Assembly: GCF_001194135.2 (NCBI RefSeq)
Contig: NC_068991.1
Location: forward strand, 78,971,094-79,008,554
Direction of reading: 5' to 3'
Source: Octopus bimaculoides
Taxonomy: Eukaryota
DNA: 37,461 bases
Shown here: piece by piece, positions 41 to 37,461 of the stretch
Layout of the letters: each line of letters opens with the position of its first letter
Position numbering within the stretch: position 1 is the first letter of the stretch
Translations under genes and position numbers: made by a program
Notes under the pieces: generated by a model
Told to the model about the DNA's origin: nothing
Seen by the model: the letters and a program-made list of their open reading frames with translations, nothing else
Databases searched by the model: none

Positions 41-867
41 CATACATACATATATATATATATATTATATTTCTATATATATATATGTATACACACATAC
101 ATACACATACACTCATAACAGAGAACAAAAACTACTCATGCATACATGTTACGTATTTTCTTTTAAGTTAATTATAAAGATACAAAAATGACTGGAAATA
201 ATGGAGATAATAATAATATAATTGAAAGTAAAAGAATAAATAAAATAAACAAGAAAGTAATAATTGATAAGAATGTTACTTTTCGTATTTTGCTAGAGAG
301 CTCTCCGGAGATAAGAACGAGTCTGGCTGTGAACATTTTTCTTCAATTTGCAAAATAATTGAATAAATATAAAACATAATACACAAGGAATATCTTTAGA
401 TGAAGGAATAACACCTATTATATCTACTTAAATTCATTCTATCCTTTATCTATTCGCGTCCAAATATATTTTGCATAAAATATATTCATAAGAAAATATG
501 TAGTGTTTTCTAATTTTCTCGTTTTTTGGACACTTCAAAAGATTTTTTTCTCATAATTTTCAAAATTTTATTTACTCTCCACTTACTATAATGTAGCAAG
601 ACATTGGCAAATGAATATCAAAACGTGGTTACTGTTACTGTCATCTTAGTCTGTGATAGCTAATTGTTTGGTTTCCTCTGAAGAATACTTCAAAAGACGA
701 ATCCTTATTGAATATAAACTCTCAATATAAACAACCGCTTTAATACGATGACTAAAAATATTATGGTATATTATTACAAAATACTATTGATATAGTGTAG
801 TCAAGTGATAGAACTGTTAGAGCATTGGAAAAAATACTCTGTGATATTTATTTAAAAAGGCTCATTA

Positions 868-1869: not shown

Positions 1870-2840
1870 CTGAAATATATACAAAAGATGCAACAGTTAG
1901 TAGGATGTCATACATTATACAGCAATCGATATTATATTAGCAACTAAAGGGTTAGCCTTTACACGACGAGTAACTTTGGAAGTATACTTTTGCTATCATG
2001 AGTACTACTAAGAAACATGGCGTACATACAATAATTGTAATTTAACTTTTATCAAATTTTATCCAAATTTTCAAAAGAAACATACGTATTGCCTTAAATA
2101 AAAATTTCTTATTTGTGTAACTCCTTCCATTATTAATCTAGCATTTACTCCTTCTTTCAATGATTCTTCCTCTTTCTTTTTCACTCTGTGCGCCTGTAGT
2201 TTCTTTACTCATTACTACAAGTTTGGTATGTGCGCTCATCTTGTACCATTTATGCCCTTACTTTGTACTTTTACTTTACTTTTTCTCTCCGTCGCCCTAT
2301 ACAATGTAAAGTGTGACTAGAGAAATGAACCCGCCAACCAACCAACCAACCATTCAGTCTTTATATCGGGTATTATTACATAGATGTCTGAAACGCTGTG
2401 TGGGAGAAGAACCGATGCTTCTAAATCCTTTTGTATTCGACATAGCATTCTCTACTTCCGGAGTGGAAAAAGACATGATATGATGAGTCAGAAGTTATAT
2501 AATGTGTGACGTTGCTAATAAAATAATTTTTCGTATTATTAACTTCACTTATAGAAATTATATATTTTCTGTATATTTACACCAACTCTACATGTCGACC
2601 AGTTGATTACCGATCATCATCGTGCAATTTAGACAAATATTCCGCGGTCGAATCTAGCCCGGTACTGTTCATATACGGGAATAAGATACCTGAGGAAACA
2701 CAGACTAATCGAATGTTGTGGCGGACGTCCCCAGGTGAGAAGTGGGCTGGTAGACAGACTCAGTGTCAATCAGTAAGGTATGCTGTTCGGGCCACTCACA
2801 CAGACGACGAAATACGTCGTCATAATGCGGGACATATCAG

Positions 2841-2853
2841 TGGCGACGAGGAT
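2841..2853 (+). promoter_or_regulatory. Primer binding site complementary to the tRNA-Ser(GCU) 3' end
   Basis: TGGCGACGAGGAT is the reverse complement of ...ATCCTCGTCG-CCA, the recalled metazoan tRNA-Ser(GCU) acceptor end. It sits at the canonical position after the LTR-terminal CA. Confidence 0.8.
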
Positions 2854-3181
2854 TCTAACCTACGCAGTGAAAAATATCAATGGCAACGAGGATTTGGAGC
2901 TCACGCAGTAGAAGAATGTTAAAAATCCCAAAGTGGGATTTGAATTTCACAATGAAAAGTAATATACACAGTGAGAGTCCGTGCGAAGGATTTAAGTCAG
3001 GTCGCTAAGTGTTAGTAGCACTACCGGTAGACAATATAGACTGGTACTACCTGCACCAGTTTGAAGATATTTACTTTGAAAATATATATATAATTCTAAA
3101 TAAGAAGAAAAAAAAATTCTCGTTAGAAGAAAAAGAAATGTAAAACATATAATGTTGTGTTGAAAGTCGAAAAAATTTCTC

Positions 3182-3194
3182 AAAGGCGGGGAGG
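3182..3194 (+). promoter_or_regulatory. Polypurine tract of the TRIM
   Basis: AAAGGCGGGGAGG (12/13 purines) immediately precedes the TG of the 3' LTR. Confidence 0.8.
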
Positions 3195-4329
3195 TGTTGT
3201 AGCAGACGTCCTCATGTGAGAAGTGGTCTGGTCCACTACTAATAAATAGTGGACAGACTTAGTAAGTAGTGTCAGTCATTGAAGTACGCTGTTGGGGCCA
3301 GTCACGCAGACGACGAAATACGTCGTTATAATGCGGGACATATAATCGAAACACAGATTCTATATATCAAGCAAGCCTTCTTTTGTAGAATGAACACCCG
3401 AACAAAATCGATCTTCCCATCATCCCGTCTGTTTAGAAAATATGAACGGACAGAATATGAACCTGGCTGAAAACTTAAAACCTAGTCCGCTAAAACCCTA
3501 TACGACCGTAGCCTGATAACTAAAATAATAAAACCATACAATGCACCATTGATAATCTAACTCCAGTCATTATTACCACTGGGTCAATGAAACACATGAG
3601 TTGCCTACCAGGCTTTTTGCAGCTAATAAACAGATTCATTCTGCTTGACATGGCTATTGCATTCTCATTTGAACTATGCACTTCTCAGTTCCATGAGAAT
3701 ATTCTATATCTATCTGTACATATATAAACATTGACATACGCACACACACGCGCGCACTCACACCTTGTAGATATGTGCACACATAAAGTTACCTTTTTAT
3801 AGATTCGGCTCCACTTTCGTACAATAAAGTAATACCATAAAGTCTATTTGGAATTTCAAGAAGGTATAACAGTTATACGATATATTATTTATAGTATATA
3901 TCCTTTAGGCATTAGTTGCCTAATATCCAGCAGGTTTCAGAAAATTTCGAAACATGTTTTTGTCTTTACTAAGTTTTTCACTTATTTAATACATAAACTT
4001 TCTTTCCTCTCGAGAATGACTAAATTTATCCGCAGAAAAAGTTGAATTGTTAGCCCAAAGCTAACATATTGCAAACAGAATTTCAAAAGTTTCACGTTTA
4101 CACCAACACGTTGCTTAAGAAGTAAATTTGCAAAGTTTGTAAAGATTTGCTTTATTCCCAGTGGTTAACTTGTTTACTCACCAGAATTATTGGAAATGTT
4201 CTTATTTTATTTTCTCACACTTGCGTGGGAAAGAAGATCTCTATCATATATAAAGATTACTTGTTGACGGAGCGTTAGTACAACTGGGTTTTTAGTTCAA
4301 GAAAAGAAAACGTTTATATATATCACTGA

Positions 4330-10500: not shown

Positions 10501-11047
10501 CTGGTGATGTGACCCCATCCGGTGGCCACTCGACAGTCTTCGAGCAAGTCTAGCCTGTAAAATAAACGATAGCCCATGAGATAAATGTGGTTCTAAAGAG
10601 ACCTGACTTCCTATTACAATGCCTATCAGAACAATCTAATTTCTAGTTAGCCAGTCCCATGAGCGAGTAATTTAATTTCTTTTCTTCTTTATTATGCGTC
10701 CCAAATGTACAAACACACACATACGCCAACTTGTTCATATACGCTCACTCACACACCCACACATGCATATTCGTATATGTATGTTTGTATTTGAAATAAG
10801 TTTAAAATTCCTCACTAAATGCTATTATGTTAATGGCCAGTTTAACCACGAAACATGCAGTGAATATAGTAGGAAAAGTAAAATGTAATGTGACAAATTT
10901 CCATTAAACTTTTTAAACTATTTGCACATCTACACTAGCATTCTATTACACACACTCAGACAACGTGAACGAAATCAAGCGCTCACAGACACAAGCATAC
11001 ATCTGTATCCATGCAAGTACACACTCCCTCATACACGCACATACATA

Positions 11048-11294
11048 TTGGGTTGGTGCATAATTATTGCGGCTTTTTTTCAACAAATTTTATTCAACAA
11101 AACAATAACAATATTTAACAAAAACATCTTTAAATGACAGTCTGACCGTCTGCCAAGCCAATCGGAAGCGGCAATTGAAGTAGATGGTGAATATGCTCTG
11201 GAATAAACATTTAAAGATGTTTTTGTTACATGTTATTGTTTTTGTTGGGTAATATTTGTTGAAAAAAAGCCGCAATAATTATGCATCAACCCAA
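11048..11294 (+). mobile_element. Mariner-derived MITE (247 bp) with about 88-bp imperfect terminal inverted repeats
   Basis: Left end TTGGGTTGGTGCATAATTATTGCGGCTTTTTTTCAACAAAT; right end ATTTGTTGAAAAAAAGCCGCAATAATTATGCATCAACCCAA. Flanked by TA (11046-47, 11295-96). The termini resemble Hsmar1/MADE1 (TTAGGTTGGTGCAAAAGTAATTGCGG). The spacer encodes AAIEVDGEYALE*, like the mariner transposase C-terminus. Confidence 0.9.
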
Positions 11295-11328
11295 TATATA
11301 TANNNNNNNNNNNNNNNNNNNNNNNNNN

Positions 11329-12466: not shown

Positions 12467-12534
12467 TGTTGATCGCTACATTGTTGTTGATCGCTACATT
12501 GTTGTTGATCGCTACATTGTTGTTGATCGCTACA
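12467..12534. repeat. 18-bp minisatellite (TGTTGATCGCTACATTGT)x3.8
   Basis: Perfect units at 12467, 12485 and 12503, partial at 12521. Explains the LIATLL repeat in ORF 12229-12612. Confidence 0.92.
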
Positions 12535-16736: not shown

Positions 16737-16897
16737 TACGACGGGTTTATTTTAGCTTCTGTCTAACAAATCCACTCACAAGGCATTGGTCGGCTCGAGG
16801 TTATAGTAAAAGACACTTGCCCAAGGTGCCACGCAGTGGGATGGAATCCGGAACCACGTGCTTGAGAAGCAAGCCTCATACCACACAGCTACTCCTG
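16737..16897 (-). mobile_element. tRNA-derived SINE (Octopus-type, family A), minus strand
   Basis: The reverse complement reads caggagtagctgtgtggtatgaggcttgct...gtggttccggattccatcccactgcgtggcaccttgggcaagtgtcttttactataacctcgagccgacc..., with A-box-like and B-box-like (GGTTCCGGATTCC) motifs. The 3' end runs into a (TA)n gap. A stub of the same head (aggcgcaggagcggctgtg) lies at about 15015-15033. Confidence 0.85.
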
Positions 16898-17173: not shown

Positions 17174-17374
17174 GACGAACTGGCAGAATTGTTAGCGCAC
17201 CGTCGAAATGCTTAAAGGTATTTATCTGTCGTCATGTTCTGGGTTCCAATCTGCCGTGGCCGACTGAGCCTTTCATCCTTTCGGGGTTGATAAATTAAGT
17301 ACCAGTTACGTACTGGAGTTGGAAAAAAATCAGACCTTGTGCCTATAGCAGAGAGGATAATTAATGATTTTAGT
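17174..17374 (+). mobile_element. tRNA-derived SINE (family B), older and more diverged copy
   Basis: gacgaactggcagaattgttagc...gttctgggttccaatctgccgtggccgactgagcctttcatcctttcggggttgataaattaagtaccagtt aligns along its length with the adjacent copy. Confidence 0.85.
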
Positions 17375-17590
17375 AAGGCGGCGAGCTGGGAGAATCGTTA
17401 GCACGTCGGGCGAAATGCTAAGAGGTATTTCATCTGTCTTCATGTTCTGGGATCAAATTCCGCGGAGGTCGACTTTGCCTTTCATCCTTTCAAGGTCGAT
17501 AAATTAAGTACCAGTGAGACACTGGAGTCGATGTAATCGATTAGTACCCTCCCCCAAAATATCAGGCCCTGTGCCTTTAGTAGAAAGGAT
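17375..17590 (+). mobile_element. tRNA-derived SINE (family B), near full length, inserted at the tail of the previous copy
   Basis: aaggcggcgagctgggagaatcgttagcacg...gatcaaattccgcggaggtcgactttgcctttcatcc...agaaaggat. Flanked by the near-perfect 13-bp direct repeat TAATGA(T/C)TTTAGT (17362-17374 and 17591-17603). Confidence 0.88.
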
Positions 17591-18896: not shown

Positions 18897-19690
18897 CACG
18901 TAAATAGTAAGGTGGATAGCAAGTGAAGGCAATGACGATGGTGATGATTGTGCTGATGGTGATGGTCTGTATTGGATTTGGTGGTAGCGATATCGGTGAT
19001 GGCGAAATAACTTGGAGTCAGCCGAATGTATAAACCAGGATATTGGTATATGAAGCAGTGAATGTAAACTTATATACTCACTTAAAAATTAACTGGAGCG
19101 TAATGTTTGCAAATACCCCCCCCCCNNNNNNNNNNNNNNNNNNNNNNNNNNNNNNNNNNNNNNNNNNNNNNNNNNNNNNNNNNNNNNNNNNNNNNNNNNN
19201 NNNNNNNNNNNNNNNNNNNNNNNNNNNNNNNNNNNNNNNNNNNNNNNNNNNNNNNNNNNNNNNNNNNNNNNNNNNNNNNNNNNNNNNNNNNNNNNNNNNN
19301 NNNNNNNNNNNNNNNNNNNNNNNNNNNNNNNNNNNNNNNNNNNNNNNNNNNNNNNNNNNNNNNNNNNNNNNNNNNNNNNNNNNNNNNNNNNNNNNNNNNN
19401 NNNNNNNNNNNNNNNNNNNNNNNNNNNNNNNNNNNNNNNNNNNNNNNNNNNNNNNNNNNNNNNNNNNNNNNNNNNNNNNNNNNNNNNNNNNNNNNNNNNN
19501 NNNNNNNNNNNNNNNNNNNATATATACATATATATATATATATAAAATTAACAGAATTGAATAACAAATCCAAGGTTGTGAAAGAATTTAGAACATTTAT
19601 AAAGAGAAGGTCTTACAAAATATCCCGGAACAGCTGTAAGAGCATCTCTTTAAACATTTTTCACATCCTTGGATTTTTTATCTCATTCTG

Positions 19691-19727
<37 letters not shown>

Positions 19728-19882
19728 CGAAAGTTAAGGGTTGTGAATCCAACCCACTAAGGGATAATATCTATGCAATACACTGCCGGAAGAATGCCCA
19801 ATTATTATTACACTAGTGTGTTTTCTTTGTATTACGAAGTGCAATAAATGGGTGCGGGTAAAAAGATATTTTACCATTAATT

Positions 19883-20150
19883 TATATAGCAATAAGAAAA
19901 TGGAGGGGAATAGATGCTAGTCATCAGCTTGCAGACATTTTATTGTTTACTAAAAGGACACTAATAACAATATACTAACACATGCGACATATTGTATTTT
20001 AATTACTGATATGACATAATATGTCACATGTGTTTGTATATTGTTATTATTGTCCTTTTAGTAAACAAATAAACAGGTAAATTGACATAATACAATGTCT
20101 GCAAGCTGATGACTACCATCTATTCCCCTCCATTTTCTTATTGCTATATA
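19883..20150. mobile_element. Fold-back MITE (about 268 bp), almost entirely palindromic, in a TA context
   Basis: Outer arms TATAGCAATAAGAAAATGGAGGGGAATAGATGCTAGTCATCAGCTTGCAGACATT and AATGTCTGCAAGCTGATGACTACCATCTATTCCCCTCCATTTTCTTATTGCTATA (1 mismatch in about 55 bp). Inner arms tttactaaaaggacactaataacaatatac...catgcgacatatt and aatatgtcacatg...gtatattgttattattgtccttttagtaaa, with a loop of about 25 nt. Confidence 0.88.
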
Positions 20151-21369
20151 TATATATATATATATATATAGGTAAATTGAAATTTAGAGGTAATACTTGA
20201 CAATTGTAAGCACCTGTGTATTCCAGCTCGTGGTTGCGGTGAAAGAATAAATTGTAAATCCAAAAAATAACAACAAAACTACAAAGGATTCCGCGGTACA
20301 CGTGTTTCAAGCTTTATATGTGTATAATATAATATGTGTATAATTTACAATGTAAAGCTATCCTCAGTCGCAAAATTATTTCTCTCCCAGGAAATTATAC
20401 CACCTCGGCGTTGAAGTAGGAAGAAAGGTGTGATGTAAGAGGTGAAGATNNNNNNNNNNNNNNNNNNNNNNNNNNNNNNNNNNNNNNNNNNNNNNNNNNN
20501 NNNNNNNNNNNNNNNNNNNNNNNNNNNNNNNNNNNNNNNNNNNNNNNNNNNNNNNNNNNNNNNNNNNNNNNNNNNNNNNNNNNNNNNNNNNNNNNNNNNN
20601 NNNNNNNNNNNNNNNNNNNNNNNNNNNNNNNNNNNNNNNNNNNNNNNNNNNNNNNNNNNNNNNNNNNNNNNNNNNNNNNNNNNNNNNNNNNNNNNNNNNN
20701 NNNNNNNNNNNNNNNNNNNNNNNNNNNNNNNNNNNNNNNNNNNNNNNNNNNNNNNNNNNNNNNNNNNNNNNNNNNNNNNNNNNNNNNNNNNNNNNNNNNN
20801 NNNNNNNNNNNNNNNNNNNNNNNNNNNNNNNNNNNNNNNNNNNNNNNNNNNNNNNNNNNNNNNNNNNNNNNNNNNNNNNNNNNNNNNNNNNNNNNNNNNN
20901 NNNNNNNNNNNNNNNNNNNNNNNNNNNNNNNNNNNNNNNNNNNNNNNNNNNNNNNNNNNNNNNNNNNNNNNNNNNNNNNNNNNNNNNNNNNNNNNNNNNN
21001 NNNNNNNNNNNNNNNNNNNNNNNNNNTTTTTTTTTTTTTTTTGTTTGCTACACTTGAATATATTTCATTGTTTTCGTTTTATATGGTTATTATCTGAGAT
21101 GCTTTTCTTTTATGCAAATATTGTATTTTGTGTTAAAATCAATTCTGAATTCTTTGACTGGAAACATTGAATGTATTCTTAGCAATCCTAAGATGCAATA
21201 CATACACGCAAGGCTTCGAAATTCACTATCTTATAATACAGAGTAAACTCTGTGTGCTTGTGTGCTTGTTTGAAGGAATGTGCCTATGTGTATTTGAGTG
21301 TATGTCTGTGTGTGTGCGCGCGTGTGGCTGCGTCTGTGTTTGTGTGTGCGTGTCTGCGTGTGTTAGTGC

Positions 21370-37007: not shown

Positions 37008-37079
37008 CATCGACAGTAGCATCAGCATCGACAGTAGCATCAGCATCGACAGTAGCATCAGCATCGACAGTAGCAGCAG
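37008..37079. repeat. 18-bp minisatellite (CATCGACAGTAGCATCAG)x4 following a (CAT)n tract
   Basis: Units at 37008, 37026, 37044 and 37062 (the last ends CAGCAG). Confidence 0.92.
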
Positions 37080-37461
37080 CAAGACCACCCGTGCCACTAC
37101 CGCCTAATCACCACTGCCACCATTCCGACCACCGCAATCATCGTGTCTTATTTCTATGAATATCATGCCACCACAAGACTATGTCCTAAACCACAATCAC
37201 TACCACTATCATTATCGTCTTCATTACTGGAACCACTAATGACCACCTCTATGGCCACCACATTCAACATCATTACCGACCTTCATCATCAAAACGACCA
37301 ATTTTACCATCACCAACTCCCAAACCACCACCACAACTACCACCACCACTATCATCGTCATCATCACCACTAGTACTAGTACCAATTACCCACTAGTACC
37401 AACACCATCGCTTCATCGTCACCATCCGCAACATCATTCTCATTAACACAATCACTAACGC
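37080..37461. repeat. Low-complexity cryptic trinucleotide tract (CAC/CAT/TAC-rich)
   Basis: Strong C/A-rich 3-periodicity. The His/Thr-rich ORF 37143-37373 is a by-product. Confidence 0.75.

What the first reader, a model, noticed from the sequence alone, without database searches (positions are those of the whole stretch)
2709..3350. Structurally complete 632-bp TRIM-like LTR retrotransposon with no coding capacity
All cis hallmarks are readable: 5-bp TSD TCGAA, TG...CA 5' LTR (126 bp), tRNA-Ser(GCU) PBS, 355-bp non-coding core, PPT, and a 151-bp 3' LTR at about 86% identity over aligned bases. TRIMs are well known in plants and reported in a few animal groups. I do not recall a described cephalopod family, so this may be new. 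It lies antisense to the host gene, about 850 bp from the TM7 exon acceptor.
Basis: partly seen in the sequence, partly recalled or inferred. Interest (0 to 1): 0.75.

Follow-up and report, generated by a model that had tools for sequence, protein, structure and literature searches.

The report
Decayed miniature LTR retrotransposon in intron
A 632-base, protein-less "miniature" LTR retrotransposon, now decayed, sits backwards in an intron of a glutamate-receptor-like gene; it is a real but ordinary mobile-element relic, and I could not test whether it belongs to a new family.

Summary
Window 2714-3345 carries two direct repeats, 126 nt and 151 nt. They are 87% identical over 126 aligned bases, with three indels. 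The 5' repeat ends TG...CA and the 3' repeat ends TG...AA. A perfect 5-bp duplication, TCGAA, flanks the pair. A primer-binding site lies 1 nt after the 5' repeat and matches the 3' end of tRNA-Ser(GCU). A purine tract abuts the 3' repeat. The 355-nt core has no Pfam match. By structure this is a small non-autonomous (TRIM-type) LTR retrotransposon, inserted antisense about 840 bp upstream of the TM7 exon.

It is an old, inactive copy. LTR divergence is K2P 0.14, the 5' LTR lacks a hairpin that the 3' LTR keeps, and the 3' terminal CA is mutated.

It is not a Helenus, Cassandra or Ajax element: the LTRs contain no tRNA- or 5S-like sequence.

I found no other copy, partner element or empty site. 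However, none of the searchable collections appears to hold this host genome, so family status and novelty remain untested. TRIMs are already known in animals, including bivalve molluscs. At best this is a new member of a known kind. Interest is low.

The parts
2709..2713 (+). Left target-site duplication, TCGAA
   Evidence: Identical 5-mer immediately outside both LTR ends
2714..2839 (+). 5' LTR, 126 nt, TGTTG...ATATCA. Relative to the 3' LTR it lacks 15+3 nt (one arm and the loop of a hairpin) and a further 7 nt
2803..2821 (+). 7-bp hairpin GACGACG-AAATA-CGTCGTC near the LTR 3' end. It is also present in the 3' LTR at 3309-3327, where a C-to-T change leaves a G-U pair
   Evidence: -10.9 kcal/mol, z -4.3; identical 20-mer in both LTRs
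2841..2853 (+). Primer-binding site TGGCGACGAGGAT, complementary to the 3' end of tRNA-Ser(GCU). Weaker tRNA-complementary sequence continues to about 2870 after a 5-nt gap
   Evidence: 11 contiguous nt from the CCA end of tRNA-Ser-GCT-1-1 as printed in PMC10359600, against at most 5 for 12 other tRNAs. The same 11-mer is assigned to tRNA-Ser-GCT in Kojima 2024, Fig. S2C
2874..2916 (+). Tandem second copy of the 'LTR end (ATATCA) + PBS' module, carrying the degenerate PBS TGGCAACGAGGAT at 2881-2893
   Evidence: 34/40 identical to 2834-2873, with three 1-nt gaps. It also aligns to the reverse complement of tRNA-Ser-GCT
2840..3194 (+). Internal region, 355 nt, 36% G+C, non-coding
2923..2941 (+). 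8-bp palindromic hairpin AAATCCCA-AAG-TGGGATTT in the internal region; function unknown
   Evidence: z only -1.4
3182..3194 (+). Polypurine tract AAAGGCGGGGAGG, abutting the 3' LTR
3195..3345 (+). 3' LTR, 151 nt, TGTTG...ATATAA (terminal CA mutated to AA)
3225..3259 (+). 13-bp hairpin with AATAAA (3241-3246) in its loop; present only in the 3' LTR. It could be a poly(A) signal or a TATA-like box. A TCAGT initiator-like motif lies about 31 nt downstream, at 3272
   Evidence: -16.9 kcal/mol, z -4.9, 0 of 200 shuffles as stable; motif positions
3346..3350 (+). Right target-site duplication, TCGAA
1680..1869 (-). Host exon encoding TM7 of a class C (metabotropic-glutamate-like) GPCR. It is context only, not part of the element
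   Evidence: AG acceptor, GT donor. Homologous ORFs elsewhere lie just downstream of exons with PF00003 7tm_3 + PF07562 NCD3G

Best explanation
This is a decayed insertion of a small non-autonomous LTR retrotransposon, TRIM-type by structure.

Inferred mechanism (standard LTR-retroelement biology). An RNA running from the 5' LTR into the 3' LTR was packaged by the Gag/Pol of an unidentified autonomous LTR element. Minus-strand DNA synthesis was primed by host tRNA-Ser(GCU) annealed to TGGCGACGAGGAT just downstream of the 5' LTR. Plus-strand synthesis was primed from the purine tract just upstream of the 3' LTR. The partner's integrase then joined the TG...CA ends into a staggered 5-bp cut at TCGAA.

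The copy landed antisense in a large intron of a class C GPCR gene. It has since drifted neutrally: the two LTRs, identical at insertion, now differ by about 13% plus indels. It is no longer mobile.

Shown here: the anatomy and the lack of coding capacity. Inferred: trans-mobilisation, the age, and the roles of the hairpins.
For: - LTR pair: E = 4.6e-23, 87.3% identity, K2P 0.141.
- Homology starts at TG and ends at CA/AA, and an exact 5-bp TSD lies directly outside.
- PBS: 11 nt contiguous from the CCA end of tRNA-Ser-GCT, against at most 5 nt for 12 other tRNAs. Local score 18 against 6.9 +/- 1.4 for shuffles. The same PBS is assigned to tRNA-Ser-GCT in two pearl-oyster TRIMs.
- PPT abuts the 3' LTR.
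- No Pfam family in any ORF, and many stops in all six frames.
- Total size (632 bp), LTR size (126-151 bp) and core size (355 bp) all lie in the TRIM range described in PMC10886601 and PMC6934838.
Against: - Only one copy is visible, and none elsewhere in the 37-kb window.
- No related sequence turned up in any collection I could search. Those collections do not seem to include the host genome, so this absence carries little weight.
- No partner element and no empty orthologous site were seen.
- U3/R/U5 boundaries, promoter and poly(A) site cannot be assigned from sequence alone.
Confidence: 0.78

Rival explanations
1. A full-length autonomous LTR retrotransposon inserted here and lost its gag-pol region afterwards by an internal deletion at this locus. 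On this reading the element is a one-off remnant, not a copy of a propagating miniature family.
For: A single copy is seen, with no family evidence. What remains of the core is exactly the two ends that such a deletion would leave, the PBS side and the PPT side. The locus has suffered other indels, 25 nt between the LTRs.
Against: LTRs of 126-151 bp match the sizes of described TRIM LTRs. From my own knowledge, not checked here, they are short for autonomous Gypsy elements, the superfamily that accounted for all LTRharvest-classified copies in O. bimaculoides in PMC6238403. No remnant of Gag, protease, RT or integrase survives in any frame.
Confidence: 0.15
2. A Helenus/Cassandra/Ajax-type 'TRIMp3': a TRIM whose LTRs carry a tRNA- or 5S-derived RNA polymerase III promoter.
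For: The PBS is shared with Helenus-3_PiIm and Helenus-6_PiIm. By eye, a stretch of the LTR (GCTGTTCGGGCCAC) recalls a tRNA-Lys acceptor end. There is no TTTT run on the + strand of the element.
Against: - ARAGORN finds no tRNA.
- Rfam finds no tRNA, 5S or other small-RNA match, even at E <= 10 on the 751-nt region.
- An nhmmer profile built from 26 molluscan Helenus LTRs gives no hit on either LTR at E <= 100.
- blastn against those LTRs gives only chance-level matches.
- The TSD is 5 bp, whereas animal Helenus make 4 bp.
- The absence of T4 runs is what composition predicts: 35% of dinucleotide shuffles also lack one.
Confidence: 0.03
3. A local duplication or chance arrangement, with no retrotransposition involved.
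For: None beyond the fact that only one copy is seen.
Against: TG/CA ends, an exact TSD, a PBS matching a tRNA 3' end 1 nt from the LTR, and a PPT abutting the other LTR all occur together. The 13% divergence and the indels between the repeats rule out an assembly artefact.
Confidence: 0.02

Closest known systems
TRIMs in general (terminal-repeat retrotransposons in miniature; first described in plants, later in ants, tapeworms, fish and bivalves: PMC3532108, PMC4558846, PMC6934838, PMC10886601)
   Same: Overall size under 1 kb, LTRs of about 100-250 bp, TG..CA ends, PBS, PPT, short TSD, no coding capacity, and presumed mobilisation in trans.
   Different: Only one degraded copy is known here, with no family, no partner and no activity shown. 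The LTR-end + PBS module is tandemly duplicated.
Helenus-3_PiIm and Helenus-6_PiIm (pearl oyster Pinctada imbricata; Kojima 2024, PMC10886601)
   Same: Molluscan TRIMs with the same tRNA-Ser(GCU) PBS core TGGCGACGAGG, LTRs of about 136-156 nt, and a G-rich PPT.
   Different: Their LTRs carry a clear tRNA-derived box A/box B segment, and this element's LTRs do not. There is no sequence similarity outside the PBS. Animal Helenus make 4-bp TSDs; this element made 5 bp. The shared TGTTGTGG LTR start is a common LTR terminus (9 LTR-start matches to TGTTGTGG/TGTTGTAG in the file, including fungal families).
biv-TRIM (bivalves; Satovic et al. 2019, PMC6934838)
   Same: A molluscan TRIM with a G-rich PPT (GGGGAGA) and hairpin or palindrome structures in the inner domain. 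The conserved inner motif TGATCCCAAAGGAC shares 9 nt (ATCCCAAAG) with the palindrome at 2923-2941.
   Different: biv-TRIM has 202-218-bp repeats, a core of only 77-80 bp, and no canonical PBS. The 9-nt match has roughly a 2% chance expectation. It could not be extended, because no sequences are held for that paper.
Ty1 of yeast: extended primer complementarity (boxes next to the PBS pairing with the T and D arms of tRNA-iMet). This comparison comes from my own knowledge and was not checked here.
   Same: Beyond the 13-nt PBS, the next ~16 nt (TCTAACCTACGCAGTG) are complementary to the T-loop and T-stem region of tRNA-Ser(GCU).
   Different: The support is weak: tail-only score 9 against 5.9 +/- 1.1, P about 0.02, measured against a human tRNA. 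It may instead be a relic of reverse transcription reading further into the primer.

Membership tests
TRIM (non-autonomous miniature LTR retrotransposon) | Two terminal direct repeats of roughly 100-250 bp | tested here: met
   126 and 151 nt, 87.3% identical, E = 4.6e-23
TRIM (non-autonomous miniature LTR retrotransposon) | LTR termini TG...CA | tested here: met
   5' LTR runs TG...CA. 3' LTR runs TG...AA, a single substitution in an old copy
TRIM (non-autonomous miniature LTR retrotransposon) | PBS complementary to a tRNA, next to the 5' LTR | tested here: met
   TGGCGACGAGG(AT) lies 1 nt after the LTR. It gives 11 contiguous nt with tRNA-Ser-GCT and at most 5 with 12 other tRNAs. Literature assignment. 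The host's own tRNA was not available.
TRIM (non-autonomous miniature LTR retrotransposon) | Polypurine tract next to the 3' LTR | tested here: met
   AAAGGCGGGGAGG at 3182-3194, 12 of 13 purines, abutting TG
TRIM (non-autonomous miniature LTR retrotransposon) | Target-site duplication of 4-6 bp | tested here: met
   TCGAA on both sides, exact
TRIM (non-autonomous miniature LTR retrotransposon) | Small size and no gag/pol coding capacity | tested here: met
   632 bp in all. There are no Pfam hits at threshold, and every frame is interrupted
TRIM (non-autonomous miniature LTR retrotransposon) | Dispersed multi-copy family with independent insertions | not testable with these tools
   No second copy in the window and none in the collections searched. 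The host genome is not in them.
TRIM (non-autonomous miniature LTR retrotransposon) | Autonomous partner sharing the PBS and LTR ends | not testable with these tools
   No host-genome or Repbase/Dfam search is available. Kojima's Fig. S2C lists no autonomous element for the tRNA-Ser-GCT group.
Helenus (TRIMp3 with tRNA-derived LTR) | tRNA-like sequence with box A and box B in the LTR | tested here: not met
   ARAGORN 0 genes. No Rfam tRNA hit at E <= 10. An nhmmer profile of 26 molluscan Helenus LTRs gives no hit on the LTRs.
Helenus (TRIMp3 with tRNA-derived LTR) | 4-bp TSD in animal members | tested here: not met
   The TSD is 5 bp; criterion from PMC10886601
Cassandra / Ajax (TRIMp3 with 5S-derived LTR) | 5S rRNA-derived promoter segment in the LTR | tested here: not met
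   No 5S_rRNA match in Rfam scans at gathering threshold or at E <= 10
Retrozyme (LTR element with hammerhead ribozymes) | Hammerhead ribozyme motif in the repeats | tested here: not met
   No hammerhead family hit in Rfam at E <= 10
biv-TRIM | 202-218-bp repeats, 77-80-bp inner domain, conserved TGATCCCAAAGGAC | tested here: not met
   The sizes differ, and only 9 of the 14 motif bases are present

The most novel reading that the evidence does not exclude
The copy is a relic of a so far undescribed octopod TRIM family. The family would be primed by tRNA-Ser(GCU), make 5-bp TSDs, and have a tandemly duplicated, tRNA-derived PBS module and a poly(A)/TATA hairpin in its LTR. That would extend TRIMs from bivalves to cephalopods and point to an unrecognised autonomous partner lineage.
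Probability: 0.4. Interest if true: 0.3.

Novelty: new member of a known kind. Interest (0 to 1): 0.2.

Why it matters
The importance is modest. TRIMs are easily missed by repeat pipelines. The recent O. vulgaris repeat annotation lists only 15 LTR families and does not mention TRIMs as a repeat class. A curated cephalopod TRIM would improve repeat masking of octopus genomes. It would give a dated insertion marker in a neuronal receptor gene, and a handle (PBS and LTR ends) for finding its autonomous partner. It does not change how these elements are thought to work, and this particular copy is dead.

Tried and rejected
1. tRNA-derived LTR (Helenus). By eye the LTR seemed to align with tRNA-Lys and with Helenus LTRs. 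ARAGORN, Rfam and an nhmmer profile of 26 Helenus LTRs all failed to support this. Rejected.

2. Shared LTR start TGTTGTGG with Helenus-6_PiIm as a sign of a common partner. The motif is common, also in fungal families. Rejected.

3. Searching for other copies through translated ORFs.
- The 69-aa ORF spanning the 5' LTR found nothing in the 5.8-billion-protein index.
- In the 1.84-billion-representative HMMER scan it found only P0008. P0008 is an ORF through an unrelated 53-bp minisatellite. Rejected.

4. Exact-match DNA scans.
- The LTR 20-mer gave nothing in metagenome or viral contigs, and two Thermoguttaceae MAG hits whose flanks are unrelated.
- The LTR-end + PBS 20-mer gave one bacterial-looking hit (L007) and one AT-rich contig (L006) with a 22-nt match.
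- In L006 the upstream 300 nt show no similarity to the LTR (P = 0.97 and 0.67), and only low-complexity similarity lies downstream. Treated as chance.

5. Orthologous empty site. The TM7-exon ORF is not on record. The best homologues are 70-77% identical, from other taxa with different intron structure, and show no element similarity.

6. Absence of TTTT on the element's + strand as a Pol III hint. Composition explains it.

7. Duplicated PBS module as evidence of pre-insertion history. With gaps the two copies are 85% identical, about the same as the LTRs, so the timing cannot be told.

8. Literature. No paper was found that couples TRIMs with cephalopods. An exact-text search for the window's SINE motifs found nothing.

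Full report
**Observation**

Reading 2400-3700 and running the repeat finder show two direct repeats, at 2714-2839 and 3195-3345.
- In a blastn of the element against the whole window, the pair scores E = 4.6e-23 and nothing else in the 37 kb matches (self-comparison).
- A global alignment gives 110/126 identical positions (87.3%), 10 transitions and 6 transversions, and K2P 0.141.
- There are three indels (15, 3 and 7 nt), and all are extra bases in the 3' copy.
- Homology begins exactly at TGTTG in both copies. It ends at ATATCA in the 5' copy and ATATAA in the 3' copy.
- Directly outside both ends is TCGAA (2709-2713 and 3346-3350).

**Internal cis signals**

Primer-binding site:
- One base after the 5' LTR comes TGGCGACGAGGAT (2841-2853).
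- I compared it with the reverse complements of 13 tRNAs printed in PMC10359600.
- It matches 11 contiguous bases from the CCA end of tRNA-Ser-GCT, and at most 5 for any other tRNA.
- With a 5-nt gap the alignment runs on into the T-arm. The local score is 18, against 6.9 +/- 1.4 for shuffles.
- The part beyond the PBS is only weakly significant on its own (P about 0.02).
- Kojima's Fig. S2C assigns the same TGGCGACGAGG to tRNA-Ser-GCT in two pearl-oyster TRIMs.
- The Aplysia tRNA end printed there suggests the molluscan match may be 13 nt. The text extraction of that line is imperfect and the host's own tRNA was not available, so I leave that open.

Other features:
- The 40 nt made of 'LTR end ATATCA + PBS + tail' are tandemly duplicated (2834-2873 and 2874-2916). 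The two copies are 34/40 identical, with three 1-nt gaps.
- AAAGGCGGGGAGG (3182-3194) abuts the 3' LTR.
- The 355-nt core is 36% G+C, every frame is interrupted, and none of seven ORFs has a Pfam family at threshold.

**LTR content**

- The 3' LTR folds into a 13-bp hairpin (3225-3259) with AAUAAA in its loop (-16.9 kcal/mol, z = -4.9). The 5' LTR lacks one arm and the loop because of the 15+3-nt indel.
- A 7-bp hairpin, GACGACG-AAAUA-CGUCGUC, is present in both LTRs. In the 3' copy the only change keeps a G-U pair.
- The AATAAA could be a poly(A) signal. Alternatively it could be a TATA-like box, because a TCAGT initiator-like motif lies about 31 nt downstream at 3272. Sequence alone cannot decide between these.

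**What it is**

These features together are the anatomy of a small non-autonomous LTR retrotransposon, a TRIM by structural definition: TG/CA-bounded repeats, an exact 5-bp TSD, a tRNA-complementary PBS 1 nt from the LTR, a PPT abutting the other LTR, and no coding capacity in 632 bp.

The mechanism is inferred from established LTR-element biology.
- An LTR-to-LTR transcript is packaged by a partner element's proteins.
- tRNA-Ser(GCU) primes minus-strand synthesis.
- The PPT primes plus-strand synthesis.
- The partner's integrase joins the ends with a 5-bp stagger.

The copy is old and inactive. The LTRs were identical at insertion and now differ by K = 0.14. The JC-to-time scale in the O. vulgaris repeat paper (0.12 for 33 My, 0.065 for 18 My) implies a rate that places the insertion at roughly 20 My. 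This is an inference.

**Context**

- The minus strand carries an exon (1869-1680, AG acceptor at 1871-1870, GT donor) encoding ...[18 protein letters not shown]....
- Its homologues in other taxa (70-77% identity) lie just downstream of exons with 7tm_3 and NCD3G domains. It is therefore TM7 of a class C, metabotropic-glutamate-like receptor. The short exon alone gets no Pfam hit.
- The preceding 7TM exon is not within the window. The element therefore sits, antisense, about 839 bp upstream of the acceptor in a very large intron.
- The window is 65% A+T and full of microsatellites and N gaps. It carries repeats that I recognise from memory as the abundant octopod SINEs. An octopod origin is therefore likely, but I could not verify it with the tools.

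**Comparison with known families**

- Helenus (tRNA-derived LTR), Cassandra and Ajax (5S-derived LTR) and retrozymes (hammerhead) were tested and excluded. There is no ARAGORN tRNA and no Rfam hit at gathering threshold or at E <= 10. An nhmmer profile built from 26 molluscan Helenus LTRs taken from Kojima's Data S1 gives no hit on the LTRs.
- Animal Helenus make 4-bp TSDs; this element made 5 bp.
- biv-TRIM differs in dimensions and lacks a canonical PBS. A 9-nt overlap with its conserved inner motif is at chance level and could not be followed.
- The element is best filed as an ordinary TRIM with a pol II-type or unknown promoter.

**Limits**

I could not find another copy, a partner or an empty site.
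- Translated-ORF searches found nothing related.
- Exact DNA scans of metagenome, viral and prokaryotic collections found nothing related.
- Exact look-ups of the window's own ORFs found nothing on record.
- The host's own exon has no near-identical hit, which shows the host genome is not in these collections. The negative results therefore say little.
- The main rival, a full-length element that lost its interior at this locus, cannot be excluded without other copies. I give it about 0.15. The LTRs are TRIM-sized, and no protein remnant survives.

**Verdict**

This is a real, correctly described, decayed TRIM-type insertion. TRIMs are already known in animals, including molluscs (bivalves). 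I found no paper describing one in cephalopods, but Repbase and Dfam could not be checked. It is a new member of a known kind at most, and of low interest.

Noticed in passing
window 17176-17319 and 17382-17528 (+): Two ~145-nt direct copies, 81% identical. Each has a tRNA-like head (…GCTGG.AGAATCGTTAGCAC…) and the tail TTTCATCCTTTC..GGTCGATAAATTAAGTACCAG. From memory they look like the abundant octopod tRNA-derived SINE, here as two adjacent insertions.
   Followed up: partly
window 16760-16890 (-): Another SINE-like piece, next to an N gap. It gave the only (weak, E = 0.28) hit of the Helenus tRNA-like profile, at 16838-16882.
   Followed up: partly
window 11041-11301, 19520-19722, 19880-20153: Long self-complementary stretches (74-77% over 210-300 nt). 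They may be foldback or MITE-like elements, or AT-rich palindromic microsatellites.
   Followed up: no
window 12467-12534 and 37002-37081: Near-perfect 18-nt tandem arrays (TGTTGATCGCTACATTGT x3.8; CATCAGCATCGACAGTAG x4.4). The second lies next to a His-rich ORF at 37143-37373.
   Followed up: no
window 2678-2713 and 3351-3385 (flanks of the element): ACACAGA occurs 9 nt before the insertion point and again immediately after the TSD (…AACACAGACTAATCGAA | ACACAGATT…). The target therefore already contained a short direct repeat; this is probably chance.
   Followed up: no
window 2923-2941: The palindrome AAATCCCAAAGTGGGATTT in the element's core shares ATCCCAAAG with the conserved TGATCCCAAAGGAC of the bivalve biv-TRIM inner domain. 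Chance expectation is about 2%.
   Followed up: partly
L006 (JGI metagenome contig Ga0209679_1130549), positions 482-503 (-): An AT-rich, eukaryote-like 1.6-kb contig with an exact 22-nt match to 'LTR end + PBS' (ACATATCAGTGGCGACGAGGAT). The flanks are unrelated. It may be chance, or another element primed by tRNA-Ser(GCU).
   Followed up: partly
whole window: 3154 N in many short gaps, mostly beside (TA)n and (CA)n microsatellites, so this is a draft short-read assembly. Only one exon of the host gene lies within the 37 kb.
   Followed up: no
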